Positions 39,264-62,237 of a stretch of DNA of 64,000 nucleotides are shown in pieces; the stretch's first letter is position 1, and the number at the start of each line of letters is the position of its first letter. The notes beneath the pieces are model-generated. The model made no database searches, was not told where the DNA came from, and saw only the letters and a program-made list of their open reading frames with translations. The position numbers and the translations under genes are program-made. Source of the stretch: Amoeboaphelidium protococcarum X5 (Eukaryota > Fungi > Aphelidiomycota). Location: positions 372,001 through 436,000 of the forward strand of contig JALDTO010000142.1 of NCBI GenBank assembly GCA_023515725.1, read 5' to 3'.

Positions 39264-39851
39264 AAAGTATTTATTATCAGAGGTGATAACCAACACTCAA
39301 AACTGAAAAAAGTGATTAATAACTAGATTTAGGACTATTGGCTATAAATTTGTACCAAGTCAATCTTCTAAAGATTTCGCTAAGGAAAGAGAAACGAGTA
39401 ACTGGGAAACTTACAAAGTTAAAGAGACTTAATCTCTGACTAAAGATATCATCGCGCGTTCAGAATAATTTTTTATTCTTCCCTCACCATATATCTCTTT
39501 TCACCTACTATGAAGCTTACGTACAATAACTGAAGTAGATAGTCATGTAGATGATACCCTCATCGCTCTCAATCCTTCTATCTCTTCTCTCTCTCTATGT
39601 ATATATCGCCCTTCCCGTTTTAAAACACTTTGAACTTCAGTGTGTTCTTCTTACGGCGCGTGTTTCTTCTTTCGCCATCCCGTTTCTCTCACGCCCTTCT
39701 CGTTTCCTCGTTCAAATCTCGTCGTAGTTACACTTGTTGCATTCACATAAAGTTATACAAGGCTAATCTTCCACTTTGTCAACTTCTATCACTGGACAGT
39801 TCCCGTCTTTTACTAATACAAACTTAGAGGCATCAAGTGGTAATAGGAGTA

Positions 39852-42113
39852 ATGATTAGAAAGTTGCTGGTGGCGAATAGAGGTGAGATTGCACTGCGAG
39901 TCATGAGAACGTGTGAAAAGTTGGGCATCAAGACTGTGGCGCTGTACACTAATGCTGATGCCAAGAGTTCACATGTATCCAGAGCCAATGAGGCATACTG
40001 TCTTGGTGAGACTAATTAGTACCTGAATATGGAGAAGATTGTAGAGGTTGCGAATCGCACTAAGGCTCAGATGATCCACCCTGGCTATGGATTCCTGTCA
40101 GAGAATAGCAAGTTCTCGCAGATGATTAGTGAACATCCATCACTGACTTTTATTGGACCGCCGGCTCCGGCTCTCAGTGCCATGGGCAGTAAGGCAGAGT
40201 CTAAACGAATCATGGACAATGCGAATGTTCCGACAGTTCCCGGATACAATGGCGCCGATCAAGATCCACAATTGTTGGAACGTGAAGCTGAAAAGATTGG
40301 ATATCCTGTACTCATCAAAGCGTGGGCTGGAGGTGGTGGCAAGGGCATGAAAATGGTAGATAATGCCGCAGATTTCTAGAATAGTCTTGCCAGTTGTAAG
40401 CGTGAGGCTTAAAAAGCATTTGGTGATGATCGCGTGCTCGTGGAAAAGTACATCAAAACTCCGCGTCACATTGAAGTTCAAGTGTTTCGAGATGCGCCTA
40501 AAGATGGCTCAGATCCTGCATGTGTTTACTTGTGGGAAAGGGATTGTTCAGTGCAGAGAAGGCACCAGAAGATTCTCGAGGAAGCGCCTGCTCCGAATAT
40601 CACCGAAGAGTTGAGATAAAAGTTGGGTCAGCTGGCTGTGTAGGCTGCAGATGCCGTAAATTATGAAGGCGCTGGAACTGTGGAATTTATTTTCGATGTT
40701 GATAGCAATGAATTTTACTTTATGGAGATGAATTGTCGTCTCCAAGTTGAGCATCCTATTACGGAGTGTATTACTGGAGTTGATTTAGTGGAATGGTAGA
40801 TTAAAGTGGCATCTGGTGAGAAGATTCCTCTTCCTCATGGCTTGAAAGAATAGTCCAGTCTTTCCAGGCGGGAGTAGTTGTAGAATTATATCAACTCTCA
40901 AGCTCGTGGTCATGCTTTTGAAGCTAGAATTTATGCAGAGGATACTCGCGATGGAGGATTCTTGCCATGTTCTGGTGTAGTAAAGCATCTACGTGTACCT
41001 TCTATCGATTAAATCAGGGATGATTTTGGCTGGGTGAGACCTGGGGATTTACGCTCTTTCGACAGCGGTAATAAGTACTTTGGCTAGACTGAGAATCATA
41101 ACGATTGGTTGAGAGTAGAATCTCATATCAAGGAAGGTGATGAAATATCGGTGCATTATGATCCCATGATTGCCAAGCTTGTCACGTACGGCCGTGATAG
41201 AGGTGATGCTTTGCGCAAAATGAAGGCTATGCTTGACCAGTACGAAGTCGTCGGTCTGTAGACGAATATTGCATTTTTGAAGAAGTTGTGTATGCATCCC
41301 GAATTTATTGCCGGTAATGTGGAGACTAACTTCATTCCAAAGTTCAAGTCTGATCTATTTGACGCACCTAATAAGAAGGCGGACGATAGAGCTATCCTCA
41401 TGGCATCTGTTGGTCTGTTTCAGAAAGAGTTGGGAGAAAGTGCACTGGGATCGCTGACTGGCTTTAGATTGAATTCCTCATTTACGCGAAAGTACCTATT
41501 AAAAGATGGCGGTGATTAGCCGGTGCAGGTGGAGATTAGTAGAAATGTCGATGGAACGCTCAATGTCAATGTCAAGCGACTATCTGTTGAAAGTGACTAG
41601 GCGAGTGTGAAGGAAAGTGGAAATGAAGGTGAGCCGGTGCATCAGTTTAAGAATGTTGTTTTCACTAAGGATCTATAAAGTGGCAAGTTGATTGTCAATA
41701 CTGAAGGTGAAAGACTTGAAAGCAGCGTAGTCACTGACAAGAGTAAGATTCATGTATTTGTAAATGGCCAAGAGACTGTTCTATAGTTGCCGTCAGCTTC
41801 TCAATACCAGGCAGGTGGTGCTGGTACTGGATCATCATCTGGTGCCAACAGCAATGTTATTAAATCTCCTATGCCGTCAAAGATTGCTTTCATTCATGTT
41901 AAGAAGGGCGACGTGGTCAAGAAGGGACAGCCTATCATTGTGCTGGAAGCTATGAAGATGGAGCATGTTATGAGGGCTGCTTAGGATGGCGTCATTGGAG
42001 ACGTTCGTGGTGCTGTTGGAGATATGGTTGGTGATTCCTAGGTGCTTGTTACCTTTAATTAACCTTCTGCTACAGGAGCTTCTGGAGGTAAAAATGGTAC
42101 CTAGAAGAAGTGA
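39852..42113 (+). CDS. MCCC1: 3-methylcrotonyl-CoA carboxylase alpha subunit (biotin carboxylase + BCCP)
   Basis: [61 protein letters not shown]. Possible upstream in-frame ATG at 39597. Confidence 0.92.
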
Positions 42114-42277: not shown

Positions 42278-45040
42278 TCACTTGTCCGCCGTCACCTCAT
42301 TAATATACTCTGGATTCTTTTTCAGAATGACAAAACCCTCCAGAATAGGACTCAGAGGAATGTACTCTTCCGTGGCCAACTCTGCACGGTCGGTATAACT
42401 CAACAATACCGGTGTGGTGTGCGTCTAGAATCCAGTGATAGTCTTTGCACGCCCCGCCTTACCAACAACATCCACAGCCTGACCGACGCGGACACTGACA
42501 GGCAGACTCTTACCCGTCTCAGCATCCAGTGTGATGAGAAAGCGCGGATACATAGCTGGCGTCAGGTAGTACAACATCCAATGGTACTTGTCCAAAATAG
42601 TCTTCTACGAGTCTAGCAGAGCCGTAAAGACAATGAGCAGACCGCTCATGGCAGCACTGGACATCAAGAATCTGTTAGAGTGGAATGGATTCACACTAAT
42701 TGTACCCTTACCCAAATACAGTAATCCCTGAGCAATACGCACCATGAACAGTCCATTAGGCTCCTTCTGATAATAAGATGCCAACTGACGCAACATCTAA
42801 GCGAGACGTGCATTATTAGTACCTGCTCCAACCAGACCCATGGCGAAAATAGCATTAATGGCCACTTTAATATCGCTGTCATGGGAGTACTTGCTCAAAA
42901 TCTCAAGAACATTGACCAGCGGGTTAGAGGCACAGAGAAGACCAATTGCCAGAGGGACAGCCTGACGAATCGCTGGCTCGCCGTAATGCATCAGATGATT
43001 AAACTGTCTCAGGGCCATTTAAGTACCAACATCCTCACCGATTGCAATCATTGCAACACCCAATGTGGCGAACGATTAAAAGCTATCGTCCTCTTTCTCT
43101 GCATCCAGGTGATCATTACAATAATGTAACATCTCCTGAACTTTCAAAACATTACCAGTGCCTGCATAAGCACAAGCATCAACAAACACCTGTGCCTACT
43201 TGGAAATAGGATGATCAATAGCCTTTAGTGTCTCCATTGTTGCATCTGCGGCATCCTACTTGCCCAGATACAAAAGACCCAATGAGACTATAAACAACTT
43301 AGACAGATGCGATTTCAAAGACTCTTCATCACGCTCCATCAGAGTCTACAAGATTGTGCTAGTCAAATCACCATTGCAAGTGCCCACAAAGATCAAGGCC
43401 AAAGACAAGGCAGCAAAAGCACTCAATTCCACAGATAGAGTGGTATCACTCACGATGGAAGACAATAGATCCATGAGATCCTCCCGAGCAGTGCCCACAT
43501 ACGCAAAACCCAATCCCACGATGGAGGCCAACTTCAAATTACTCTTTCCACCTCCAGCACCATCCTCCAAATGTTCACTCAGCAACGCAATCGCTGGATC
43601 ACTTTCATTTCTCACTCCACAATTCACCAGGCCGATTCCCATCAGAGCACCAGCTTTGACATGATCCTCATTGGAGTATAAATACTTGTCCAAGTGGGTG
43701 AGACCTTCCTCGACATTCCACAGTGACAGCAGACCTATAGAAGCAGTAGCACTAGTCATACCATGCTCCTTGTTCTTATAGATCCAAGAGTTGGAATCCT
43801 CACAATCCAAAATGAGCTTATCCTTGTTGAATCCAACATTAACGAAAGCATTTACAATCGCAGAGGCCAAATTCTATCTAGCCGAGTCAACATTGGCACC
43901 GAAACCACCAGCTTTATTATCTTCCAAATGGCTCTTGTAAATATCTTCAGGAGTCTTGGCTTCCACAATATCCAAATCCTTGGCCAGATTAGTAAATTAC
44001 TCTGAGAGAGCTCCATTCGAGAAGATACCAGTCAACTCTTCATCTGCCACGTCTACTTCAATGAACTGTCTGGTCAGATTATAAGCCAACTACTTCTTTA
44101 CCAAAGCATCTGGACACTCGGTGAAATCCTGTACAATTAAATCCTGATCATTCAACTTCATGGCAATCTGCACAGCTTCTGGCCACTTGTTAAACTTCTT
44201 AAAGATGGAGTGAGCCACCTTGAGAGCAGTCACATCATCTGGGGAAGGGACATAACTTGCACAGCTGACTAGGTACATGGACACTCTCTGATAAGTCTCC
44301 TTGCTCACAAGCTCAACTAGACTCTCAAGCGACTCAATTTCAAGCAGAAGATCCACGGCATCATGTTCAGCGTTATGGGACAGGAAGAATGGGACCAACT
44401 TCATGGCAAGCGTGGTGAGCTACTTCACTTCTGGAGACTGTTGCGCATCCTCCACTCCGACCTTCTCGTTATACTCTGCAATCAATTCCAATGCAAGATG
44501 ACGAACATACTCATGTCCCCAGGAGCCAACATCATCCTTACTTCCAGCCTGGTAATAATGCAGAGAATCCCTAGCAGTTCCGTCATAGTAAGTCATACCT
44601 AGAACCGACAAGATATCAGCCAAGAACTACTTGTCCTTACCATCCTTCCACCCGTTAAACACTTATTTCAAAGTATCATAATGAGGTCTCAAAAACTTGA
44701 GTGGTTTCGGAACCGAAGTCATAGAGGAGGTAGAGGAGCGGATTAGACTTCTCAGCGATTCCAAGGCAGCATGATACAGCGAAGAGTTCTTCTCTTGCAG
44801 ACGCTGGACAAGCATTTCCAATTCAGAGCGCAAGTTCAAATCTTCTTCAGAGAGATCCTCATCTGGATTCTGCTGTTAATCCTTCTATTATTTACCACTA
44901 ACATCCTACTTCTGTTACTACTGACCGTCATGTGCATTCGACGACGACGATTAAGTAGAGCTTTTCTTCTCCTTATTGTCCTGAGGCGGCTCCTCAGATG
45001 AGTCTTTCTTATTTCTTGTACTTCTGCGAGTTTCCACCAT
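42278..45040 (-). CDS. RPN1: 26S proteasome regulatory subunit Rpn1 (920 aa)
   Basis: [32 protein letters not shown] repeats, [28 protein letters not shown]. Confidence 0.97.
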
Positions 45041-45403
45041 GTTCAATAACTGTCCTGAAAGTACGTTAATTATATGATACGTTTTGAGAAGAAGAATGAA
45101 AGCTCAGCTAAAAACGAGCGTAGACGGAACGAAAAGAAACACGAAAAGATCAGCGAGGTGCCTTTCTGGTCTCACTCAATTCACTTGCCGATAAGCGTGA
45201 TGGAGCGACCGGAAAGAGCGAAAACATTTACGTAACACACTGGTACACAAAAAGTGCATTAGCCGAATCTCAATTCTTACAAGAGTTCTAACCGGTACTT
45301 GCATTGCATTGCATTTTATTTTATTCATTCATTCATTCATCTTCTTATAACAGTTTCCATCATCATTGTTCGCATCATTTCAACTTTAAAGTTCGCAAAT
45401 TGC

Positions 45404-48400
45404 TCAGTAGAGATTGATCAAAACCTGTAACACTTTTTAGGCATTAACACGAGTAAATACATTCTAATCCCAGGCATTATCAACAATCTGACAATATTTG
45501 TCGAGCCTTGGATCTTGGATGGTTGGTTGAATTTATACTCTGCCACCTGCACAAACAGACTCATATATCTGTTCTTTAGTGAACCCCTTCCAAGCCGGCT
45601 GTCTGTTCAGCAGTTCCGCCAGAATGACAGCACCTGCAAACACGTCGCGCTTTGGTTTCAAATCATCAGATACAGGTTGGTTCATCCAAACTTCGGGTGC
45701 AGCATATGAAGGAGTAGAACCAGCTAGTGCATTCCAATTCAGCCCGGTAACCGTCTATGATGTGCCCAGCAGGGTACAAATACCGAAATCGGTCAGGCAG
45801 ACGCGTACCTGTCCAGATGAAGTGTCCACTAGATAATTGCCAGCTTTAATGTCGTTATGGACAACACCTGTAGCGTGCATAACCACCATAGCAGAGAATA
45901 CATCAATAGCCAGAGACTTTACGAGATCAAAATTCCATTCAACCTACTAACTTAACACGCTCTTCAAACCGATCAAATCATCCAATGATCCATTTTGGTA
46001 ATAGAACATCAACATCACCAAATTCTCAGCATCAAAACCAGCCAGTTTTGCAATATGAGCACAATCTTTGAATCTCCACATTAAAGCGACTTCTTGCAAG
46101 AAAGCTTCGGAGTTCGCCTTGTTCGATGTATATTTTGCAACCATGGTCTGGCCTTCGTATTGACGCAACGGATGGTCGGATGGGGTAGTCAGTATCTGTA
46201 CAAGCCATATACTACCTTAACCACCAGCATTCAGTTAGGAGTTTGGAACTTTACGGAAATTCTGACCCTCACTTAGCCGTAAAAATCCGGGAACTGAGAT
46301 TTCAAACGAGGTTGGGAGCATTGTCGTACCACCTTGCATTTACGTGCTAATGACCTGCATAGCAGTAGTGGTGGCGGCAGAGGACGCAACACTACTTTGT
46401 GTATACGTGCTGGCCCTTGTCATCTAAGTGCTAACCTTTTTAGTACGACGATACTTTTGGCGCGCATATAGTCCCGCAATCAGAACAGCTATCACAAATA
46501 CACCAGATACAATAGCTGCAACCGCGGATATCATTGACGATTAGCCCTATAAAGCCTGAGGCCCAGATTGGTCTCGAGCACCCTCATTTGAATTGGTGGA
46601 AACAGACTAACCTCCATTAAGATTGCCAATTCCAAAAGTTATCAGCCCATTAATTGAAGTACTTACTACAAAAGACGAGCTAGATGGCAATATAATTGAC
46701 GTCTTTGTAGAAGAGCTTAGAAAACCAGCTAAATATGTTACTGTAGACATAACGGCTGTCGATGCAGAAAGGAAGTGAGAAGTAGATGAGAATTAGGTAG
46801 CAGAACCATTGGTAACAGAGCCATTAGTAACAGCAGTACCGGTAAATACCATGGACGTAGAGAACGAGGTGGCAGTTGGTGTAGAAGTAGTGGTAGTAGT
46901 CGTAGTCGTGGTACTAGTTGTGGTAGTGGTCGGAGTGGTTGTAGTAGAGGTAGTTGTCGTAGTTGTGGTAGTAGTAGAGGTAGTTGTGGGAGTACTAGTC
47001 GTTGTTGTGGTCGTCGTCGTAGTAGTCGTAGTTGTTGTACTTGTCGTCGTAGTACTGGTGGTGGTAGTCGTCGTAGTTGTAGTAGTAAGTACCTTAGGAA
47101 GCAGATTACCAATCTTTGCCACACCTTGAACAATTGCCAAATTCTTCGTAACTCCAGAGTCTTCAATAACATCTACAGAGCTTCCACTTGTCTGAAAGGA
47201 AATGATGAAACCACGATCTTCCAACGCAAAACCTTTCTGGAGATTAACATTTTACGAGGGAGTATAAATAATAGTTTGATTGAAAAAATTGCCAGTTGAA
47301 TCAAATACCATAATGACTGCGTACTGACCGGCGAAGGGGTGCACGTACTACTTTGTTATACTACCACTGTTGTTAAAGCTGATTGTAGCGGCTGAAGACA
47401 CACCACTAAACAGCATATTATCGTTTACATCAAATTGAAGAGGTAGTTTAACAGCGGCAGAGCCAGATATAACTAACCACTTAGAAATAGACCTTGCACC
47501 CTGCAGTTTTAATAGATAAGATCCAAAAACCCCAGTTGCTCCAAGAGTCATCACTGCAAAATTTGAAGCATTATACGCAATAAAAGGACCGTTAACGAAA
47601 ATAGAAACATACGCAGCACCTGACTTATCGAAAGAGACTCCACCAGAAGTTTCATCGCCTATGCCAGCAAATCGCCAATTGTACTGGAACGCTCCAGTGG
47701 AATTAAATATCAACAGAGCACAATCAATTCCTTAAACAAAGGGCGCTGAAACCACCCGACCTGTGGAGTCAATAAGATTAACAGCATTTTATTGATTCAT
47801 CTGCATGTACAAGTCGCCATTGGAGCTAATTTACATTCCAAAGTCCAAGGCAAATGTATAGTCGTTGAGGAAATAAATCAGATTAAGATTATTATCAAGC
47901 ATAAAGACATGACCATAGCCACCACTGGAAGGACCAGCGACATTATCATTGTTATAGTATACAACTGGGTTATTTTACCAACCACCAAAACTGTTCCATA
48001 CATGGATCACGACTTAACCATTAGGGCCAGTGAGGCTATAATGAGGCACATTCCACGAGCCATCCGCGCCAAAACGTGCAGTTCTCAATAGAGTACCATT
48101 ACTAGCAAATTTGGCGACTACTGGCTGGGAGCCGCCATTTAGAGGAATGGTCTTGGCTACTAGATTAGTCGTAGTGTAAAATTTGAAATCACTTGACTAC
48201 TCCCATACAGTTGCTATAATGTTATCAAAGGGATCGACGGTAAGCTAAACCATAAAGTCGTCAGCAGCACCACTCATCATTAAATGCCACTGTAACGCGC
48301 CAAACTTATCATACTTTGCAATGTAAGCATCAGCACCACTCTGATAAACCTGGGTTAACACAAAAGAGCCATTTGCAGAGTATATCTGCTCATTCAACTT

Positions 48401-48541
48401 TCCGACAACCTAATAAGCGTAGAAATTTCCTTTAGAATCTTGTTTAGTAACGTACAAAGAGCCTGTGGCACTGATAGTAAAATCGACGCCAGCAGTGATT
48501 ACATCGGCCAGCAGCAACCAAGATGAAACTATAAACCACAT
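45404..48541 (-). CDS. Receptor-like protein kinase A (1045 aa): signal peptide, beta-rich ectodomain, Thr stalk, TM, non-RD kinase
   Basis: MWFIVSSWLLLADVITAG; poly-Thr; TM followed by RQKYRRTKK; AGGQG, VAK, FLQEVA, HNDIKAGN, DFG, YAAPE; intronless single frame. Confidence 0.88.
46860..47090 (-). repeat. ACN-codon poly-Thr mucin-like stalk of kinase A
   Basis: Low-complexity GTN repeat on the + strand. Confidence 0.9.
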
Positions 48542-49050
48542 TTTCGTATGCGAGTAATTTATTTAAAGCTTAATAGGGAGATGTAAATGAGACAAAAGCG
48601 CAAAATGACTTATAATCCGTAATCTGAACCCAATATGCATTGGAATAACCTTGGGATTGGACGAGTACAGGAATCTCTGATAGGAATCGTTATTAAATCT
48701 ATTTTCATGTCTTGTATGAAAAATGCGATAATGAAAGTAACATCAGATTCTGTATATAACATGTATATCAGCTGTTTTTCGACCGCCGCAGCTGCTGAGA
48801 GTATCGTTGCGAGTGGCTTGTTTCAAATGCTATCATACGTTTCACCTCAACAGCTTTTGGGGGAGATCATACAGTGAGAATGCAACTCTCACGGTTGCGG
48901 AGACCCCGATTTAACTGTACACGGCGTCTAAAATACAGTAAGAAATAAAGATTGATCACAACTATTTTCTTATACATTTCATCGTTTACTTTTACTATCA
49001 TCATTTTTTACTATATATCACTGTTCTAAAGTAATCAAAGAGCCCATTGC

Positions 49051-52000
49051 TCATTGAAGATTGACCAATTCATTCAAAACGCGTTGAGCATGTACACGCG
49101 TAAATATATTCTAATCCCAGGACATTTCAATAATTTGAAGATATTTGTCAAACCTTGGATCTTGGATGGCTGGTTGAATTTTAACTCTACCACCTGCACA
49201 GACAGACTCCTATATCTACTCTTTGGTGAACCCCTACCAAGCCGGCTGTCTGTTCAGCAGTTCCGCCAGTATGACAGCACCTGCAAACACGTCGCGCTTT
49301 GGCTTCAAATCATCAGATACAATTTGCTTCATCCAAACTTCCGGAGCAGCATACGTAGGAGTGGAACCAGCAAGTGCATTCCAATTCAGCCCGGTCACCA
49401 TCTTCGATGTGCCCAACAGAGTACAAATACCGAAATCGGTCAGGCAGACGCGTACCTGTCCAGATGAAGTGTCCACTAGATAGTTGGCAGCCTTGATATC
49501 GTTGTGCACGACACCTGCTGCGTGTAGCACTACCATTGCAGAGAATACGTCAATAGCGAGGGACTTGATCAGTTCAAAGTTCCAAACCATTTGCTAACTT
49601 AACACACTCTTCATATTAATAAAATCATCCAATGATCCATTCTGATAGTAAAACATCACCATAACCAAATTCTCAGCATCAAAACCAGCTAGTTTGGCAA
49701 TGTGAGCACAATCTTTAAATCTCCACATCAATGCAACCTCTTACAAGAAAGCCTCTGCACTAGCCTTATTAGTAGAGTACTTTGCAACCATAGTCTAACC
49801 ATCACATTAACGGAAAGGATGATCAGACGGAACAGTGAGTATCTAGACAAGCCAAATACTACCTTGACCACCAGCATTTAGCATAGAATTAGGAATTTTA
49901 CGAAAGTTCTGCCCTTCACTAAGCTTCAAAAATCCAGGTACAGAGATTTCAAACTAAGTAGAAACCATAGTGGTGCCACCTTACATTTATGTGCCTCGAA
50001 CCTCCATGACAGTGGAGGAAGCTGCAGAGGGTGCGGCACTGTTTTAAGTCAAAACAGTAGCTTTAGTCATCTGCGTGCTAATCTTCTTGGTACGACGGAA
50101 CTTTTGACGCGCATATAGAGCAACTACTAATACTGCGACTACAAAGATGCCGGAAACAATAGCTGCGACTGCAGATATCATTGATGACGAAGTTTATTAA
50201 GCTTATGGCCCAGATTGATCTCGAGCACCCTCATTTGTGTTCGTGGATACAGAGGAGCCTCCAATAGAACCACCAATACCAAACGTTATTAGCCCATTAG
50301 TTTAAGAGCTGACTGCAAAAGATGAGCTCGATGACAATTTAACAGACGTCTTTGTAGAAGAGCTTACTATACCAGCTTAATATGATACTGTAGAGATAAC
50401 GGCAGTCGATGCAGAAAGGGAGTGAGAAGTAAATGAGAATTATGTAGCAGAGCCATTAATAACAGAGCCATTAGCAACAGAAGTAAATACCAAGGACGTA
50501 GAGAACGAGGTGGCAGTTGGTGTAGAAGTAGTCGTGGTAGTAGTTGTCGTAGTAGTTGTCGTAGTCGTCGGAGTAGTAGTGGTGGTCGTTGTTGTCGTCG
50601 TGGTCGTAGTCGTGGTGGTAGTAGTACTTGTCGTAGTTGTGGGAGTACTAGTCGTTGTCGTGGTTGTTGTGGTCGTCGTAGTAGTCGGAGTGGTTGTGGT
50701 TGTCGTAGTAGTGGTGTACAGCAAGGTAGGTACAGGTAGGAAATCCAACAGTCTCGCAACACCTCTCTGAGTAGGAATGGCAACTTGGCCACCTCTTGTA
50801 TCATTGAACAGAACACCCTATCCATCAGTGATCAAACCAGCTAGCAATTTGTTCTGAGGAAGCCACTAAAAATAGCCAAATCTTGTATTTTGTGTTGAAT
50901 TGTACAATAGACTGCGACCCCAAATCTTGCCCAGATTGTGGTAAGCAAACACAATACCATATTGAAAGGGAAATTAACGATTGTACTGCGTTGAAATCAC
51001 ACCAGTAGTGTTGACACTCAATAAAGCAGCATCAGAATATAAAGCATAAAACAAATTATCCTAGCTGTCCATGTGCATGTAGCATGTAGTGGACCCAACA
51101 CCACTTACGCTGGACCACCATGTAACAGATGTCCCGCCATTCAGCTTGAAAAAATAACCTCCAGATACACCAGTTGCACCCATTTATAACACGGGAGTAT
51201 TAACACCATTAAAAACAGTGAACGGACCAGTGGAGGATACCTGTTAAATTGGAGCCCCGGCATTATCGAAAGTTAGCTAAATAGGCGCCTAATCGCCCGC
51301 GCCACTAAACCTCCAATAATACAAGAAGGCTCCAGTGGGATCAAACACTATCAAGTTGACATCGAAGCCAGAATCATATGAAGTATAAACTTCAAAGCCT
51401 TTAGTATCCGTGAGAGCCGTACCTGACTATGCATACTGCTGATAATAGAGCACACCCGTGGGTCCTATAGTTAAACGCGAAAATACAGCGAAACTACCAT
51501 CATCAATATTATAGATGTGATTGAGGTTATTGTCCATCATGAAGATGTGCCCGCCACCATTACTGGTTGCGACAATAACGCCATCGTTATTATACATATT
51601 CACGGGATTTGTAGGCCATCCGCCGTAAGAGTTCCACATCTGCACTGCAAACCATCCGTTGGGCCCAAGCACAGAAAAGTTTGGAACATTATACGACCCA
51701 GGAGCATACAGTTGAGCTGTGCGGAGCAATGTTCCATTAGGATGAACTTTTGCAACGACACCTTAAGTGCCACTCGGAATGTTGATAGACTTCACAGGTT
51801 AATGATTAATGCTATAATACTTAAAGTCTTGCGATGTTGTCCAAGTAGAAAAGAACAGATTATCCTGAGCGTCAACAAAAGGACCTTAACCCCAGTCATC
51901 ACCGCTACCAGCAATGTGGAAGTACCACTGCAGATTACCCTGAGCGTTAAATTTCATGTAGATACTGTCTGAACCACCTCCAGCGTAGAAAGTTGTTGTA

Positions 52001-52182
52001 GTCACAGACCCATTCGCAGAATAGATCTACTCACCAACTTTAGATACATATGCACGTGCGTAAAAGTTACCTGCGGAGTCAATAGTGGAGAGTTCATAAT
52101 CACTCGTGCTTCTAATAGTAAAATCGTTAGAAGCAACAGCAAAGTTGATAAGCAATGCAGTCAATGCCACGCGAATATTCAT
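49051..52182 (-). CDS. Receptor-like protein kinase B (1043 aa)
   Basis: MNIRVALTALLINFAVA signal; same architecture as A; HNDIKAAN, DFG, TYAAPE. Confidence 0.88.
50510..50720 (-). repeat. Poly-Thr stalk of kinase B
   Basis: ACN codon run. Confidence 0.9.
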
Positions 52183-52420
52183 TGATGGCAAATTATTCGT
52201 AAAGACTAACGTTGTAAATTGCTGACGAGTTGTACAAAAAAGCTGAACGTGGGAAAGAGAAGGATAAGCACAAAGTCTGTACTGTATGCTGATGCAATAA
52301 CAATGCAAGTTGTCTGATTGGTACATTATAAGCAGAATTGATTGGCCATTCTAGGCCGAAAAGGCAAGCAAACTGAAGCTTATACGATAAATAGATTATT
52401 TTACTTCACATTTTAAAAAT

Positions 52421-55400
52421 TCATTTCAAACCATAAAGAGAATTCAGAACCTACATTGCGTGCGGCCTAAACGTAACATCCTACTCCCAAGCAGCATAAA
52501 TGATCGCAATTAACGCGTCATTCTTTGGGTCTTCAAAGCATAGACTTAAAGAAGGACGCCCGCCGGCCAAAACAGCTTGACTTATTTGATCTCTACCTTG
52601 TCCCGCCCATGCCACTTATCTGTTGACCATCTCAGCCATTATGACAGCACCGGCATAGACGTCACGTTTCATTCTTTGTTAATCAAGCAACACTAGCTTG
52701 AGCCATACCTCAGGTGCGGCGTAAGTCGCAGTAAAGCCATTCAGGGCATTCCACGTCATACCAGTGACTGCTTTGGATGAACCCAATAGGGAGCAAATAC
52801 CAAAATCGGTAAGACATAAGCGAATTTAACCAGAAGACACATCAACCAGATAGTTACCAGCCTTAATATCATTGTGCACAACACCTGCTTGATGAGTGAC
52901 CTGTATAGCGGCAAAGACGTCCACAGACATTGAATACACCAAGTCAAAATTATAACTTACCAGGCGGCTAATTTCGCTCTTGCATTCGATGAACATTTCC
53001 AGTGAACCTTGCTAGTAATGAGCCATCAAAAGGATCATATTCAAAGGGTCAAATCCGACTATTTTTGCTATATGTGCGCTATCCTTGAATCGCCACATCA
53101 AAGCCACCTCTTACAAGAAAGCTTCAGACGAGCCAACACCATTACTATACTTGGCAACAAATTTCTCGCCAGGCTGTGGTCTTAAAGGATATTCATAAGG
53201 TAGATCCAGTATTTCAGCTAGCCAAATAGAACCTTAACCACCAGCGGTGAGTTGAGAATTGGGAATCTAACGAAAGTTGAGCCCTTCTGTCAGTCTCATG
53301 AACCCGGGAACTGAGATCTCAAATGATGTCGGTGCCAATGTTGTTCCTCCTTGCATGTTCGTAGCTCCTTAGTGCATAGTGGTAGTTAATGCAGAAGATG
53401 CCGCGCTACTTTGAGTATACGTACTTGCTCGGGTCATTTGAGAGGTTACCTTACCAAAACGGCGACGACGTAACTTATGACGAGCATATAGAGCAGCTAG
53501 TACAACTACCAGAACAAAGACAGCAGCTATTATTGCCACGATAGTCGATAACATTGAAGATGAGCCCACAAGAGCTGATGGATTAGTCTAGTTTTAAGTA
53601 GAATCGTCCACACCAGTTGTCGATTAAACCTTACTGTACGCAAAGTCTCCCAATCCAAAAGTGACAAGATCAGCAGATGAGGAAGTCCTAATAGTTGTGA
53701 ATGAGGACGACTACAGCAATGGTTAGGTTGTCTGTTAGACTAGCGACGTACTTGCCTTTGTGCTTGTACCAAGAGCCACCGTTGATGATAAATTTGCAGT
53801 ACTAGTAACTTGGGCAGCATTCCAGGTACTTGACGATGCAGCGGATGCGAAAGGCGCAGTATTATTATTAGCAGTAATTGAAGTCGTGGTAGTAGGAGTA
53901 ATAGTGGTTTTAGTTGAAGTTGTTGTCGTCGTCAATGTTGTCGTAGTTGTTGTGGAGGTGGTAGTAGATGTTGTAGTCGTAGTAGTGGGAGTACTAGTCG
54001 TTGTAGTAGTTGTAGTGGTACTTGTGGGAGTACTTGTTGTCGTGGTCGTAGTTGTTGTTGTTGTTGTGCTTGTAGTCGTCGTTGTACTTGTAGTAGTAGT
54101 AGTTGTTGTTGTCGTGGTGGTTGTGGTAGTTGTCGTCGTAGTACTAGTCGTAGTACTTGTGGTGGTAGGTACCATAGGAAGCAGATTACCAATTTTTGCA
54201 ATGCCTTGAGCGAAGGCGTAATTTTTTGTTGTACCAGAATCTTCAATAATATTCACAGCACTTCCACTTGTTTAGAAAGCTACTAAAAAGCCACGATTTG
54301 CCAACACAAAACTTCCAAAGAGAGTAATACTTTGCGCAGAAGTGTAGATTACAGTTCGGTTGAGGAAAGAGCCAGCCTAATTATGTACCATAATGATTGC
54401 ATACTGACCGGTAAAAGGATGCACATACTAATTGGTGACAACACCATTGTTGTTAAAGTTAATCGTGGCGGCTGCGGACACACCATTAAACACCATATTG
54501 TCATCTGAATCAAAAGCAAGAGATAATTTTACAGCAGCCGAGCCAGTTATAGCCCACCGTTTCAATATAGATCTTCCACCATCAAGCTTGAAGACATAAG
54601 ATCCGGATACTCCTGCAGATCCGAGCGTCATAACTGCAATATTAGAAGCATTGTAAGCAACAAAAGGACCATTGACGAACACCGAAGCATAAACCGCACC
54701 AGACTTGTCAAAAGAAACTCCACCAGGTATTTCATCACCTGAACCAGAAAAACGCCAATAATACTAGAACGCACCACTGGAGTTGAACACCAACAGAGGA
54801 CAGTCCACTCCGCTGACATAAGGTGCAGAAATCAAGCGACCTGTGGAATCGGTCAAGCTCACAGCAGTTTACTGATTCATTTGCAAAAATTAATCCCCAT
54901 TAGCGTTAATTGTCATTGTGACATCCACGGCGAAAGTGTTATCGTTGTGGAAGTACACAAGATTTAGATTATTGTCAAGCATGAACCTATGACCAGTGCC
55001 GCTACTGGACGGGCCAGCAACATTATCATTATTATAATAGACGACTGGATTGTTTTACCAACCACCGAAGTTGTTCCATATATGAACCAATACCTGTCCA
55101 TTAGGACCCACGACTGAACTCTGTGGCACATTCCACGAGCCAGCCGCATCCAAACGCGCAGTCCTTAACAGAGTGCCATTACTGGAAAATTTTGCAACAA
55201 CTGCCTAAGAGCCACCACTTAAAGGAATAGTTTTGGCCACTTGGTTAGTTGTTGTGTAAATTTTGAAATCACTAGACTACTCCCATATTACTGCAATAAT
55301 GTTATCAGAGGGATCAATGTTAAGATAATACATATAATCGTCATTAACACCTGTAATCATGAGATGCCACTACAACGCGCCAAATTAATCATACTTTGCA

Positions 55401-55621
55401 ATGAACGATTCAGCACTGCTCTGATAGACCTGAGTTTGAACAAATGAGCCATTAGCAGAGTATATACGCTCATTCGCGACTCTGACATGTGAATATGTGT
55501 AGAAGAAGCCTTTTGAGTCTTGTTTAGTTGCCCATGTACCCGTAGCAGCCCTCACAGTAAAGTCGACGCCAGCAGTGATCAAGTTGGCAAGCTGCAAGGA
55601 AGCTATCACGATAGCCCACAT
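52421..55621 (-). CDS. Receptor-like protein kinase C (1066 aa)
   Basis: MWAIVIASLQLANLITAG signal; TM IVAIIAAVFVLVVVLAALY; HNDIKAGN, DFG, TYAAPE. Confidence 0.88.
53880..54170 (-). repeat. Poly-Thr stalk of kinase C
   Basis: ACN codon run. Confidence 0.9.
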
Positions 55622-56408
55622 TCTTAGAAATAGTTACATATCGAATCAAACTATTTAAAAATTATTTAATCTTATAATTATCAGCTTAATCAATTATATG
55701 ATGTAAAAAGGAGCACCGTAACGAAATTTTGGGACTATATGCAGCGAAGTGGCTTGGGATTGGCCAGAATAAGCGCCTCTGATTGGAGCCGCAATTATAA
55801 TTGATGGGTTTGGCCTCATTCACTTACTTTAATCTTTGGCCAAATTCAGTGCATAACGTTGCATTAGACTTTATATGTACAATGGCTACTGTTTCAGTAA
55901 TACGCTATTTTTGCATTTAAAAATACGCTGAAGAATATGGTAACAAAGTAGTGATGGGAGCATGACGCTTCAACAGAATCGCGCCAAAGATGATTAGAAA
56001 ATAGAATTTTATTGCACTATAGATATATTTCGCAGCTCTAATTGATTTGTTCAGTTAGAATCACTACGGCTGCATCTGCGTAAAATCCATACACAATCGA
56101 GAGTTTTATACAGTACCACAAAGCAACCGCGCGAAAATGAATTCAAAAACTGAGAAAAAGTCCAGTAAGTTCTATATCGGTTATACGAGCATCTATGAGA
56201 ACAAGGGTGTCAGTGTACAGTAGAGTTTAATCCTTTGCTGTTTCATGCCTTGATCATAGCGGCGGAAATCATTTCAATCAACGGGCGACCGTCATCTGTC
56301 TATCTATTCATTTTCGCTATTTCGCCCCATCGCAACAGACTGAAAGTGAGAGCCGGTGAAACCATCAGGATTCCTCTCTCTCCATCTTTCGTTGCTCCCA
56401 GTACAACA

Positions 56409-57596
56409 ATGATGAACTCTGTCAAGTCACCAACCGTAACACAGGCTTAATTAAAGTCGCAGGATAAGGCCAAGTCACCGGCAAGTCGTACCATGTCTTC
56501 TAAAGGTCGCAAAACCTCGTTGACACCGAATGTACCATCTGATGAGTCTGCGCCTGCACTCAATGTCTCTGGCGATGAAGTAGATTTTCCGCTTAAGGAC
56601 TCAGTTCAGTAGAAAGACGCAACTGTTAATGGTGACAGAAGCGAGGACATGATTTCTATGGGCTAGTAAGAGAAGCTAAATAATGTCGGTGATACTGATG
56701 ATGCTGGCGATATCGCAGCTGCTGAAGGAGGCGATTTCGCTGAAGCACATGGCTCCTAAAATGCGTCAACCGAAGAATTACTTCTTAACTTTGATTCTGC
56801 AAATACAATGACATCTGACAGAGAAAAATAATCTGGTGATAATATAAATAAGCTGGCCACGGAAAATAGTGGTAGCAGTGCTGACGATGATGATAACAAT
56901 GACGAGGATGGAGTACATAACTCGGGATTGATATAACAATAGCAATCATCCAATCACCTTGCCGCCATAGAACAGAGACTTGAAGAGACGCGGAAACGTC
57001 GTAAAGTGTTGCAGCGTGACATGCAAAGAATTTCTGATAAATTTAGTGAAGTCAAGAGCAAGTAAGCTGATATTAGCCATTTTCTGTGAATTTGATATGT
57101 TGAATTGGTGTGTCTGATGTAGATTGTATATAGGGAAGGATCGGTTGTTAGTTGAAGAGATTGCAATGCTTTAAGCAGGTAATTTTGCATATTAAGCCTC
57201 GAGTCTCATGTCATTGTTTTACTCGCATGTGTAGGTAATCATCCAGAGTTGCGAAGACGAATGAGTGTCATTTAGTAAGTGCATGAGGATCGAGTCAATA
57301 TTGCCAAGCGAAAGTTTGATCTCCACAGGAGCTGCATTGAGTCTGAGTATCAGTCGCGCCTCGTTTCGATCGCGAAACAAATTTTGATCGCCTCGGCTGA
57401 TGAACGATCGTCGCTGACATTTTCGGCTGATAAGCAACGCGTAAAATCGACACTTGAAGTAAAAGACGATATATACGACTCGTGGTGTCTTGCTGGTGAG
57501 GATTTGAGTTCATGTCAAGTTTCCTGTAAGATAGAACCTCTCACGGAGCAAGAGTTCAGAGAAGATATGGCGGCTATAAGCTAATTGATCAATTGA
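56409..57596 (+). CDS. Sds3/BRMS1-like Sin3-HDAC subunit; introns 57062-57122, 57179-57234
   Basis: Acidic disordered N-terminus, then MQRISDKFSEVKSKLY..L.EEIAMLQAGNHPEL coiled coil; C-terminal EQEFREDMAAI. Confidence 0.75.
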
Positions 57597-59338: not shown

Positions 59339-60911
59339 TTTGGTCAGTTGAGTCCGAAAATTTAAGGTTTGATGTTGTTACAAAGGAGAAATTACCCGCG
59401 ATCGCACCAAACATAGCGAGTTTGAATGGTTGTACGATAAATGCTCTAGTTATTAATCAAGTTGGCTCTTATTCTTTATAAGGATAAAATATATTGCTGG
59501 TAAATGACAACAAGACATATATCTTTCAATGTTAGATTCTGAGGTTAGTTCTTTGTAAGGTGTGTTATAAAAGATTGAATACAACATATCACAGTTCCAA
59601 TGATAGCCACCTGGCGGAGTGGAAACGCGTACTTGAGAACAGGATGGTCAGTGCAAAATTATGCGATATATATACTGAAACACTTACTGACGGCCAGTAT
59701 AATTAACATCCAAGTTGACTCATGATAATTTTCATCATGCTAAATGGTACGCGTTTTGTGACGTGTTAGTGGTAAAGAATACGTCATGACTGGTAGAAAG
59801 AGAAAAAAGCTGACATCATGAACTCTTCTTCAGAAGGTGCAAAATGCTGCTGCGATCAACGTGAGCTATGAGTGAAAAGTATAAAACAGTGTCTACGTCT
59901 ATCTTTTAAGTCTCCCCTGAAACAGTCACATGCACATCGATCCATGCTGATTTGAATGATATGATGCCGACAGCATCGACTGTTCTACTGGTTATTTGGG
60001 CGTGTAAAGTATATGGCATCCTAAATATGAATTGATGGTGCCAATGAGTTGTTTCATTTACCACAGAGATTGCGTTAAGTAAATCAATTGAGGTAGTCGT
60101 TGATGACCAAAATAAGGTGGTCATTTGGGGGATTTATGGTTTAGTCCAAGTATGATTATGCTAGTAGATGCGATCTGAAATTTTTTGTTTTGGGGTTAAA
60201 CAGACTGTTACTCTGCAGAGAAATTAAATTTAGAGAAAAATATGCTGCTGTACCTTTATGGTATCAAAAGAGCAGACTTGCTCAAGTGTCTTTACGCGTC
60301 AATGTTCCCTTGATTGTAGTAAAGACTGAGGACTCCTAAATTTTCGTTAAAACTGCTAGATATCGTGTCTTTACCTTCCCATTTGATATTAATGCACTTA
60401 ATGTTGGACGCCTAAAGAGCTATCCATGATCAATGGTAACACCTCACACGATTGTCACGTTGTTGTTCTATAGAGAGTTCTTCTAGTGCAATAATCGGAC
60501 GTTCTAATCGGTGGTCTACTCATCGAGTATCATAGTATTAGATTTCTATGGACCTTGGCTTGATCGACACTTGTTAAATAATAACATTATTCAATTATAT
60601 ATTTAATCTTGATAGAGTTGACGCTCGATGAAAAAATACATTAATATAACGCCTCGTCTCTGATCAAACAGATCGTCATCGGTTAAAGTCCGAAGCGCGC
60701 GGGATCCGAAGCTCATCGTTCCCGACGCCACCCCAATCTCAATCTCTCTCGCTCTCTCTCGTCCTCTCTCGGTTTAAGGCTTTACGTTCCGCTTCCGATC
60801 GAGCCTTCTCTCTTCTTCTTCTCTTTAATCGATTCAAATTATACGTAATCGAACTATTAAAACTAGGATTGCCTACGCACTTAATACTACCGCATCTGAA
60901 TATTACTAACA

Positions 60912-62237
<1,326 letters not shown>

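What the first reader, a model, noticed from the sequence alone, without database searches (positions are those of the whole stretch)
45404..55621. Tandem array of three non-RD receptor kinases with mucin stalks and variable ectodomains
Three intronless genes of about 1050 aa share signal peptide, a ~450-aa beta-rich (propeller-like) ectodomain, a poly-Thr stalk, one TM helix and an intact kinase with an HND (non-RD) catalytic loop. Single-pass receptor kinases are essentially absent from Dikarya. Non-RD receptor kinases are typical of pattern-recognition receptors in plants. Inference: a diversified surface-sensing system, for example for host or pathogen recognition in a parasitoid.
Basis: partly seen in the sequence, partly recalled or inferred. 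Interest (0 to 1): 0.8.

Follow-up and report, generated by a model that had tools for sequence, protein, structure and literature searches.

The report
Three tandem aphelid receptor-like kinase genes
Three neighbouring genes of the algal parasitoid Amoeboaphelidium protococcarum, readable only in its variant genetic code, encode membrane receptors with a beta-propeller outside and a kinase inside; they are real, but belong to a receptor-kinase expansion already reported for this genome.

Summary
Under the bacterial code the region has no ORF above 173 aa. The three minus-strand, uninterrupted ORFs are K1 45404-48541, K2 49051-52182 and K3 52421-55621 (1045, 1043 and 1066 aa).

- **Architecture:** each has a signal-peptide-like N-terminus, a ~465-aa ectodomain, a 67-78-residue poly-Thr run in a ~60% Ser/Thr stalk, one TM helix with a basic stop-transfer, and a protein kinase. 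The kinase has an HND loop and every catalytic residue.
- **Organism:** Amoeboaphelidium protococcarum (MIR68_ locus tags).
- **Ectodomain:** a remote SBBP-type beta-propeller. The fold was modelled on a kinase-less paralog.
- **Selection:** dN/dS is 0.08-0.26 in ectodomain and kinase, so these are functional genes without gross diversifying selection.
- **Mosaicism:** K1 has a K3-type ectodomain and a K2-type kinase. The switch lies inside the poly-Thr run.
- **Family:** at least 28 loci in this genome. Other scan notes describe similar genes elsewhere in it.
- **Novelty:** aphelid receptor-like kinase sets differing from fungi are already published (Mikhailov et al. 2022, as cited in PMC10608142).

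Expression could not be tested, and host recognition remains conjecture.

The parts
45404..48541 (-). K1: complete single-exon gene, 1045 aa plus TGA stop (TAA/TAG = Gln)
   Evidence: homeolog on C98 is 96-97% identical
47087..48541 (-). K1 signal peptide plus beta-propeller ectodomain (aa 1-485); K3-type
46874..47086 (-). K1 poly-Thr run (aa 486-556); the switch from K3-like to K2-like sequence lies here
46532..46873 (-). K1 Ser/Thr-rich stalk remainder (aa 557-670)
   Evidence: whole stalk 60% Ser+Thr; dN/dS 0.66
46469..46531 (-). K1 transmembrane helix (aa 671-691), followed by YARQKYRRTKK
45407..46258 (-). K1 protein kinase domain (aa 762-1045), HNDIKAGN, DFG, APE; K2-type
49051..52182 (-). 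K2: complete single-exon gene, 1043 aa plus TGA stop
50716..52182 (-). K2 signal peptide plus divergent propeller ectodomain (aa 1-489; 38% identical to K1 and K3)
50515..50715 (-). K2 poly-Thr run (aa 490-556)
50116..50178 (-). K2 transmembrane helix (aa 669-689)
49054..49905 (-). K2 kinase domain, HNDIKAAN; stop-free piece 49237-49593 scores Pkinase E 1e-17
52421..55621 (-). K3: complete single-exon gene, 1066 aa plus TGA stop
54170..55621 (-). K3 signal peptide plus propeller ectodomain (aa 1-484)
53936..54169 (-). K3 poly-Thr run (aa 485-562)
53489..53551 (-). K3 transmembrane helix (aa 691-711)
52424..53275 (-). K3 kinase domain, HNDIKAGN; the divergent one (57% identical to K1 and K2)

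Best explanation
K1, K2 and K3 are three native, functional, tandemly duplicated genes of the aphelid Amoeboaphelidium protococcarum, read in its nuclear code where UAA and UAG encode Gln. Each encodes a type-I membrane receptor-like kinase. Shown: the open frames, the code, the domain order, intact catalytic residues, the non-RD loop, purifying selection, the paralog family, and the domain mosaic. Shown for a paralog only: the ectodomain folds as a single multi-bladed beta-propeller of remote SBBP type. Inferred: the signal peptide is cleaved. The poly-Thr/Ser stalk is O-glycosylated and holds the propeller away from the membrane, above the glycocalyx or cyst wall. The propeller binds an extracellular ligand, most plausibly a glycan or other surface polymer. 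Binding changes receptor oligomerisation, and the kinase then phosphorylates cytoplasmic Ser/Thr targets. As a non-RD kinase it would not need activation-loop phosphorylation. The family diversifies by duplication and by exchange of ectodomain and kinase modules at the repetitive poly-Thr coding DNA. These genes are members of the receptor-like kinase set already reported for aphelid genomes.
For: Frames are open only with TGA as stop, and TAA/TAG alternate with CAA/CAG between homeologs. The share of Gln codons written as TAA/TAG is 0.40-0.52, typical of the neighbouring genes. Organism: P0001 and P0085 are named A. protococcarum MIR68_ proteins and lie on contigs of 1,966,960 and 732,360 bases, the lengths of C98 and C142. 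UAR = Gln in this species is published (PMC5304391). Kinase: Pfam Pkinase E 1e-17 on a 119-aa stop-free piece. In 26 of 26 family kinases the beta3 Lys, alphaC Glu, HxD Asp, Asn, DFG, APE Glu and subdomain XI Arg are invariant, and none has Arg before the catalytic Asp. Topology: hydropathy peaks, a basic stop-transfer, and 5-6 N-x-S/T sequons outside against 0-1 inside. Ectodomain: the profile search recovers SBBP/DUF5122 repeat proteins with 5-11 matched stretches each; there is internal repeat signal; the AF2 model of paralog P0001 (38-40% identical) has pLDDT 74.6 and pTM 0.78 and is all-beta; its best match is the CylK propeller at Z 24.4 over 365 residues at 3.5 A. Selection: dN/dS is 0.12-0.26 in the ectodomain, 0.08-0.15 in the kinase and 0.24-0.9 in the stalk. 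Mosaic: domain trees conflict with 99-100% support, and the switch falls at K1 aa ~480-540. Family: 11 loci carry this ectodomain, and at least 28 have the receptor-kinase architecture. Prior report: PMC10608142 citing Mikhailov et al. 2022.
Against: No dedicated signal-peptide or TM predictor was available, so topology rests on hydropathy, charge and sequon heuristics. No Pfam family reaches its threshold on the ectodomain pieces of K1-K3 themselves; the best is DUF5122 at E 0.015. The fold was modelled on a kinase-less paralog with a shallow 18-row alignment, not on K1-K3. Ligand, glycosylation, oligomerisation and substrates are entirely inferred. Kinase group assignment is weak.
Confidence: 0.75

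Rival explanations
1. These are adhesins or wall and surface-stress mechanosensors rather than ligand receptors. The glycosylated poly-Thr stalk would act as a spring, as in fungal Wsc1/Mid2 sensors, and the propeller would anchor to the parasite's own cyst wall or to the host wall. The kinase would report mechanical strain during attachment and penetration.
For: The order signal peptide, extracellular head, long Ser/Thr stalk (60-64% Ser+Thr) and single TM parallels Wsc/Mid2-type sensors (my own knowledge of that family). The stalk evolves under relaxed constraint (dN/dS 0.24-0.9), as expected of a spacer or spring. Kinase-less paralogs with a short tail exist (P0001, P0085).
Against: There is no WSC or Cys-rich head; the ectodomain has a single Cys. 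Wsc/Mid2 sensors have no kinase. The propeller is conserved under purifying selection along its whole length, which fits a specific binding surface as well as it fits an anchor.
Confidence: 0.15
2. These are specifically host-recognition receptors analogous to plant non-RD pattern-recognition receptors, diversifying in an arms race with the algal host.
For: The non-RD loop is present in all 26 family kinases. The family is expanded, tandemly arrayed and modular. The organism has a parasitoid lifestyle. TKL kinases of innate immunity (RIPK2, IRAK4) are the top profile hits.
Against: Ectodomain dN/dS is 0.12-0.26 with no gross excess over the kinase. Homeologous ectodomains are 94-97% identical. 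No plant RLK appears among the top 60 solved structures, and the margin over CDPKs is about 5 bits. There are no expression or stage data.
Confidence: 0.2
3. These are not functional genes: decaying duplicates, or frames that look open only because two stop codons were read through.
For: No expression data. Each frame holds 24-32 TAA/TAG.
Against: Three frames of more than 1040 codons without a TGA cannot arise by chance at about one TGA per 55 codons in the other frames. The same genes stay intact in the homeologous array. dN/dS is far below 1. All catalytic residues are kept. TAA/TAG density matches that of housekeeping neighbours such as RPN1/2. Family members are annotated as proteins in GenBank.
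Confidence: 0.03

Closest known systems
Receptor-like protein kinase sets of aphelids (Mikhailov et al. 2022, Curr Biol, doi 10.1016/j.cub.2022.08.071; cited in PMC10608142)
   Same: Same organism and genome (A. protococcarum, MIR68_ tags), same kind of protein, and an expanded family of at least 28 loci found here.
   Different: The paper is not held in the library, so I could not check whether it describes the SBBP-type propeller, the HND loop, the poly-Thr stalk or the module exchange. That it reports a 'conspicuous expansion' is my recollection of its abstract. The tool-based evidence is only the citing sentence.
Plant RLK/Pelle non-RD pattern-recognition receptors (FLS2, EFR, XA21) and animal IRAK/RIPK kinases (TKL group)
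   Same: Single-pass signal peptide, ectodomain, TM and kinase. The Arg before the catalytic Asp is missing. The loop is DIKxxN-type. RIPK2 (E 1e-17) and IRAK4 (5e-17) are the best solved-structure matches to the family profile.
   Different: The ectodomain is a beta-propeller on a mucin-like stalk, not LRR, LysM or lectin. The loop is HND rather than HCD/HGD (two wider-family members have HCD). CDPK1 scores nearly as well (3.7e-16). Pfam Pkinase outscores PK_Tyr_Ser-Thr on the C-lobe, 64.9 against 37.9 bits. No plant RLK is in the top 60. This looks like an independent origin, not orthology.
SBBP / DUF5122 beta-propeller repeat proteins (PF06739, PF17164) and the CylK propeller (PDB 7fh6, 7ron)
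   Same: The ectodomain profile hits such proteins with 5-11 repeated stretches. The paralog model superposes on CylK residues 250-653 at Z 24.4, above generic WD40 propellers at Z ~20.
   Different: Sequence similarity is remote: best non-self E is 3.6e-16, summed over 10 repeats. No Pfam hit reaches threshold on K1-K3 pieces. None of the 17 hits checked for domains carries a kinase. CylK is an enzyme, not a receptor.
Fungal Wsc1/Mid2-type cell-wall integrity sensors
   Same: Signal peptide, extracellular head, long Ser/Thr-rich stalk that is presumably O-glycosylated, single TM, cytoplasmic signalling part (family features from my own knowledge).
   Different: Those sensors have a Cys-rich WSC head or none, and a short tail without a kinase. 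Here there is a propeller with one Cys and a full kinase.
Independent receptor-kinase expansions in other protists (Entamoeba transmembrane kinases, brown-algal receptor kinases, holozoan RTKs)
   Same: A lineage-specific expansion of single-pass kinases with lineage-specific ectodomains (comparison from my own knowledge, not tested here).
   Different: Different ectodomains and kinase clades. No sequence comparison was run.

Membership tests
Eukaryotic protein kinase superfamily (Pfam PF00069) | Significant match to the Pkinase profile | tested here: met
   K2 piece 49237-49593: E 1e-17, 64.9 bits against a 31.7 cut-off. K1 piece 45758-45943: 38.2 bits.
Eukaryotic protein kinase superfamily (Pfam PF00069) | Catalytic residues: beta3 Lys, alphaC Glu, HxD Asp, Asn, DFG Asp, APE Glu, subdomain XI Arg | tested here: met
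   Invariant in 26 of 26 family kinase domains, including K1-K3.
Non-RD kinases | No Arg immediately before the catalytic Asp | tested here: met
   HND in K1-K3 and in 22 of 26 family members; HDD in 2 and HCD in 2.
TKL group / IRAK-Pelle-RLK family | Kinase domain groups with IRAK/Pelle/plant RLK to the exclusion of other groups | tested here: inconclusive
   Family profile against PDB: RIPK2 67.3 bits, IRAK4 65, CTR1 and RIPK1 62, but CDPK1 62.1; no plant RLK in the top 60. A single piece gave PAK4, CaMK and PknA at E ~1e-7. Pkinase outscores PK_Tyr_Ser-Thr. No reference-kinase phylogeny could be built.
Single-pass (type I) receptor kinase architecture | Cleavable signal peptide, one TM helix, ectodomain N-terminal and kinase C-terminal of it | tested here: met
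   N-terminal hydrophobic peak. One TM peak of 2.8-3.2, then a basic cluster. 5-6 N-glycosylation sequons outside against 0-1 inside. These are heuristics only; no SignalP or TMHMM was available.
SBBP-type beta-propeller (PF06739 / PF17164) | Pfam repeat matches above threshold in the protein itself | tested here: not met
   Only DUF5122 at E 0.015 (16 bits, cut-off 27) on K1 piece 48017-48196. Four other ectodomain pieces had no Pfam family; K3 1-78 had only a chance-level Borealin match at E 0.15. Full-length paralog P0001 had none.
SBBP-type beta-propeller (PF06739 / PF17164) | Remote homology to SBBP carriers and a propeller fold | tested here: met
   Profile A2 hits SBBP/DUF5122 proteins with multiple stretches. 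The AF2 model of paralog P0001:20-500 is a propeller: CylK Z 24.4, WD40 propellers Z ~20. It was not modelled on K1-K3 themselves.
Mucin-like O-glycosylated stalk | Long Thr/Ser/Pro-rich low-complexity segment between ectodomain and membrane | tested here: met
   67-78 consecutive T/S/P residues; the whole stalk is 179-206 aa at 60-64% Ser+Thr.
Mucin-like O-glycosylated stalk | Actual O-glycosylation | not testable with these tools
   Needs biochemistry.
Published aphelid receptor-like kinase set | Encoded in an Amoeboaphelidium genome and of receptor-like kinase architecture | tested here: met
   Organism; architecture; the prior report is cited. The paper itself was not readable.

The most novel reading that the evidence does not exclude
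The poly-Thr coding repeat may be more than a spacer. It could act as a recombination hinge that lets ectodomain and stalk/TM/kinase modules be swapped between paralogs, giving an early-branching relative of fungi a combinatorial way to rewire surface receptors. The ectodomain module may be a bacterial-type SBBP propeller recruited to a eukaryotic kinase, with kinase-less receptor-like proteins as a by-product of the same modularity.
Probability: 0.3. Interest if true: 0.55.

Novelty: already known. Interest (0 to 1): 0.35.

Why it matters
Fungi lack receptor-kinase architectures (PMC6733946). Their sister lineage, the aphelids, has many. This bears on how the ancestor of fungi sensed its surroundings, and on what was lost when osmotrophy and a permanent cell wall evolved. 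That point is already in the literature for this genome. This check adds three things at the level of one locus. First, the genes are intact, under purifying selection and catalytically competent by motif. Second, the ectodomain is a remote SBBP-type propeller with no close relative outside this species among 1.84 billion representative proteins. Third, modules have been exchanged at the poly-Thr run. These are useful annotations and a testable hypothesis, not a new kind of system.

Tried and rejected
- **Bacterial-code ORF listing** found nothing. This led to the code test.
- **Full-length K1-K3 proteins were never sent to any search or fold tool.** By reference they contain stops, so only stop-free pieces were used. 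Read-through translation in the organism's own code was done only in local scripts, for alignment, trees and dN/dS.
- **Alignment A3** of 54 short ectodomain pieces was misaligned because of the repeats (6-20% identity) and was discarded. A4, built from long pieces only, replaced it.
- **Alignment A5** misplaced the juxtamembrane pieces. A6 replaced it.
- **The search for homologous proteins** with P0001 returned only three kinase-less paralogs. Its length window prevents pieces from reaching the ~1050-aa proteins.
- **PDB sequence searches** with the single N-lobe and C-lobe pieces of K1 found nothing.
- **The ESM Atlas search** gave only generic kinase clusters.
- **The Mikhailov 2022 paper** is not held. 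Other aphelid papers say nothing on these kinases.
- **blastn-short of the upstream regions** found no similarity between K1 and K3 promoters at E 1e-3. A short shared motif would be missed by this test.
- **Direction of the module exchange** was considered but left open. A simple unequal crossover between K3 and K2 does not give the observed order.
Full report
**Observation**

Listed under the bacterial code, the region 44000-57000 has no ORF above 173 aa. All six frames carry 156-264 standard stops. When only TGA is treated as a stop, three long minus-strand frames appear at 45404-48742, 49051-52425 and 52421-55645. Similar long frames then tile the rest of the window.

Counted from the Met that opens a hydrophobic N-terminus, the genes are:
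- K1, 45404-48541, 1045 aa
- K2, 49051-52182, 1043 aa
- K3, 52421-55621, 1066 aa

Each has 24-32 in-frame TAA/TAG. The K1 homeolog has a TGA only seven codons upstream of that Met, which fixes the start.

The code is supported internally. Of 341 TAA/TAG codons compared between homeolog pairs, 264 are conserved as TAA/TAG, and the commonest replacements are CAA and CAG. In K1-K3, 40-52% of Gln codons are TAA/TAG, as in the neighbouring genes.

**Organism**

A kinase-less paralog recovered from the protein libraries (P0001) is identical to a gene I had extracted from contig C98. It is named 'hypothetical protein MIR68_000987 [Amoeboaphelidium protococcarum]'. P0085 (MIR68_002602) lies on a contig of 732,360 bases, the length of C142, which holds the window.

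UAR = Gln in this species is published (PMC5304391). The assembly seen here has 23.6 Mb in 346 contigs, and the window's GC is about 41%. That is close to the published 24.7 Mb and 40.5% (PMC10608142). Most loci occur as pairs 93-98% identical on different contigs, as expected of a hybrid genome.

**Anatomy**

All three proteins share the following layout:
- an N-terminal hydrophobic segment ending in ...ITAG/VASN
- an ectodomain of ~465 aa with one Cys and 5-6 N-x-S/T sequons
- 67-78 consecutive Thr/Ser/Pro residues, within a stalk of 179-206 aa at 60-64% Ser+Thr
- one TM helix (Kyte-Doolittle 2.8-3.2 over 19 aa), followed by YARQKYRRTKK-type basic residues
- a juxtamembrane segment of ~70 aa
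- a kinase domain

Stop-free pieces of the kinase match Pfam Pkinase (E 1e-17 for K2 49237-49593). Across 26 family kinase domains, the beta3 Lys, alphaC Glu, catalytic Asp and Asn, DFG, APE Glu and subdomain XI Arg are invariant. The residue before the catalytic Asp is Asn (22), Asp (2) or Cys (2), and never Arg. 'Intact non-RD kinase' is confirmed by motif.

**Ectodomain**

Pfam gives nothing above threshold on the ectodomain pieces. The best is DUF5122 beta-propeller at E 0.015.

I searched a profile of diverse stop-free pieces (A2) against 1.84 billion representative proteins. It found one strong hit, P0001 from this same genome (E 2.8e-48). It also found 82 weak hits, each matched in 3-11 stretches. 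Of the 17 hits whose domains I checked, 13 carry SBBP and/or DUF5122 propeller repeats and none carries a kinase. The exceptions are P0001 itself, a WD40 protein and a TSP3/NosD protein. Self-comparison of the family profile shows internal repeats at offsets of 68, 204 and 269 residues.

The full proteins contain reassigned stops and so could not be submitted. I therefore modelled the kinase-less paralog P0001:20-500, which is 38-40% identical to K1 and K3, using an alignment that includes K1-K3 pieces (A4). The model is all-beta, with mean pLDDT 74.6 and pTM 0.78. Foldseek and VIA-align place it among beta-propellers. The best match is the propeller of CylK (Z 24.4, 365 residues, 3.5 A), ahead of generic WD40 propellers at Z ~20. 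'Propeller-like' is supported, by proxy. I did not determine the number of blades.

**Family**

The K1 ectodomain piece has 11 matches in the genome:
- the three window genes
- the homeologous array on C98
- a copy on C154
- a pair on C207 and C146
- a kinase-less pair on C142 and C98, about 800 aa, ending in a short tail (receptor-like proteins)

The kinase piece has 32 matches at 44% identity or more. Seventeen further loci that I extracted show the same signal-peptide-like N-terminus, ectodomain, poly-Thr, TM and HND/HDD/HCD kinase plan (one of them cut at its 5' end by the locus edge). Some of their ectodomains match the propeller profile repeat-wise and others do not. With the 11 close members, at least 28 loci have this architecture.

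Other first-reader notes of this scan describe similar genes on other pieces of the same genome.

**Selection**

I computed Nei-Gojobori dN/dS in the organism's code. Between homeologs and paralogs it is 0.12-0.26 for the ectodomain, 0.08-0.15 for the kinase and 0.24-0.9 for the non-repeat stalk. The genes are therefore maintained by selection. The ectodomain is only slightly less constrained than the kinase, and there is no gross signature of an arms race. Site-level tests were not possible with so few sequences.

**Mosaic**

| Pair | Ectodomain identity | Kinase identity |
|---|---|---|
| K1 / K3 | 69% | 57% |
| K1 / K2 | 38% | 85% |

C154 follows the K1 pattern. Maximum-likelihood trees conflict:
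- The ectodomain tree has a clade (K1, C154, K3) at 100/99.
- The kinase tree has a clade (K1, C154, K2) at 99/99.

A sliding window puts the switch at K1 residues ~480-540, inside the poly-Thr run at 486-556. This agrees with other first-reader notes. The direction and mechanism, whether gene conversion or crossover, remain open.

**Kinase group**

A single piece finds only weak, mixed PDB matches: PAK4, CaMK, PknA and CTR1 at E 1e-7 to 1e-6. A family profile (A6) ranks RIPK2 (1e-17) and IRAK4 (5e-17) first, then CTR1 and RIPK1, but CDPK1 is only about 5 bits behind. No plant RLK is in the top 60. The family leans towards TKL. Membership of the IRAK/Pelle/RLK family is not established.

**What is known**

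Kiss et al. 2019 found no receptor-kinase architectures in fungi (PMC6733946). PMC10608142 cites Mikhailov et al. [quoted passage not shown] As I recall its abstract, that paper reports a conspicuous expansion of receptor-like protein kinases in these very genomes. It is not held in the library, so I cannot say which details it covers.

**Verdict**

The interpretation as surface receptors is reasonable. The host-recognition and plant-PRR analogy is unsupported. At the family level the phenomenon is already published. The locus-level additions are the remote SBBP propeller, the universal non-RD loop, purifying selection, kinase-less paralogs and exchange at the poly-Thr run. They are moderately interesting.

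Noticed in passing
L001:5558-9117 and L009:208-2127 (G000:C98:~298000-304700), between the homeologs of K1 and K2: The C98 homeolog of the array carries an ~8.7 kb insertion that the window lacks; the K1-K2 spacer here is 510 bp. It holds three long ORFs (437, 658 and 628 aa) with no TAA/TAG sense codons, whereas native genes have 0.7-8 (mostly 2-8) per 100 codons. One ORF matches HNH_2 (E 2e-7) and one matches DNA_pol_B_2, the organellar/viral type B polymerase (E 1.7e-49). Only fragmentary copies lie elsewhere (C146:313985-323507). It looks like a standard-code mobile, virus-like or linear-plasmid-like element in a host with a reassigned code.
   Followed up: partly
L005:1348-4065 (C142:~96850-99560) and L006:2311-4956 (C98); proteins P0085, P0001, P0084: These are kinase-less paralogs of the same propeller ectodomain (~800 aa): signal peptide, propeller, Ser/Thr stalk, TM and a short tail. 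They are receptor-like proteins, analogous to plant RLPs next to RLKs.
   Followed up: partly
window 46874-47086 (K1 poly-Thr) and the equivalent runs in K2 and K3: The switch between K3-like and K2-like sequence in K1 falls inside the poly-Thr run. The non-repeat stalk of K1 and K2 has a lower dS (0.36) than their kinases (0.76), which hints at a more recent conversion tract there.
   Followed up: partly
window 42278-45103 (-) and 39555-42113 (+): The neighbouring genes are ordinary housekeeping genes: a proteasome RPN1/RPN2-type subunit (RPN1_RPN2_N E 1.7e-40, PC_rep) and a biotin carboxylase / carbamoyl-phosphate-synthase-type ATP-grasp enzyme.
   Followed up: partly
window 60900-62237 (+): This ORF has an unusually low share of TAA/TAG among its Gln codons (0.23, against 0.40-0.77 for the other genes of the window). 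That fits the idea that highly expressed genes avoid the reassigned codons.
   Followed up: no
L010, L011, L013 (G000:C233:321500-341500 and C213:209500-219000): There are further tandem arrays of receptor-like kinases of the wider HND clade, with two or more adjacent genes each. Tandem duplication is therefore the general mode of growth of this family.
   Followed up: partly
window 48542-49050 and 55622-56198 (upstream of K1 and K3): blastn-short found no similarity between the K1 and K3 upstream regions at E 1e-3, while each is 93-95% identical to its own homeolog. A short shared motif, as another note proposes, would not be detected by this test.
   Followed up: partly
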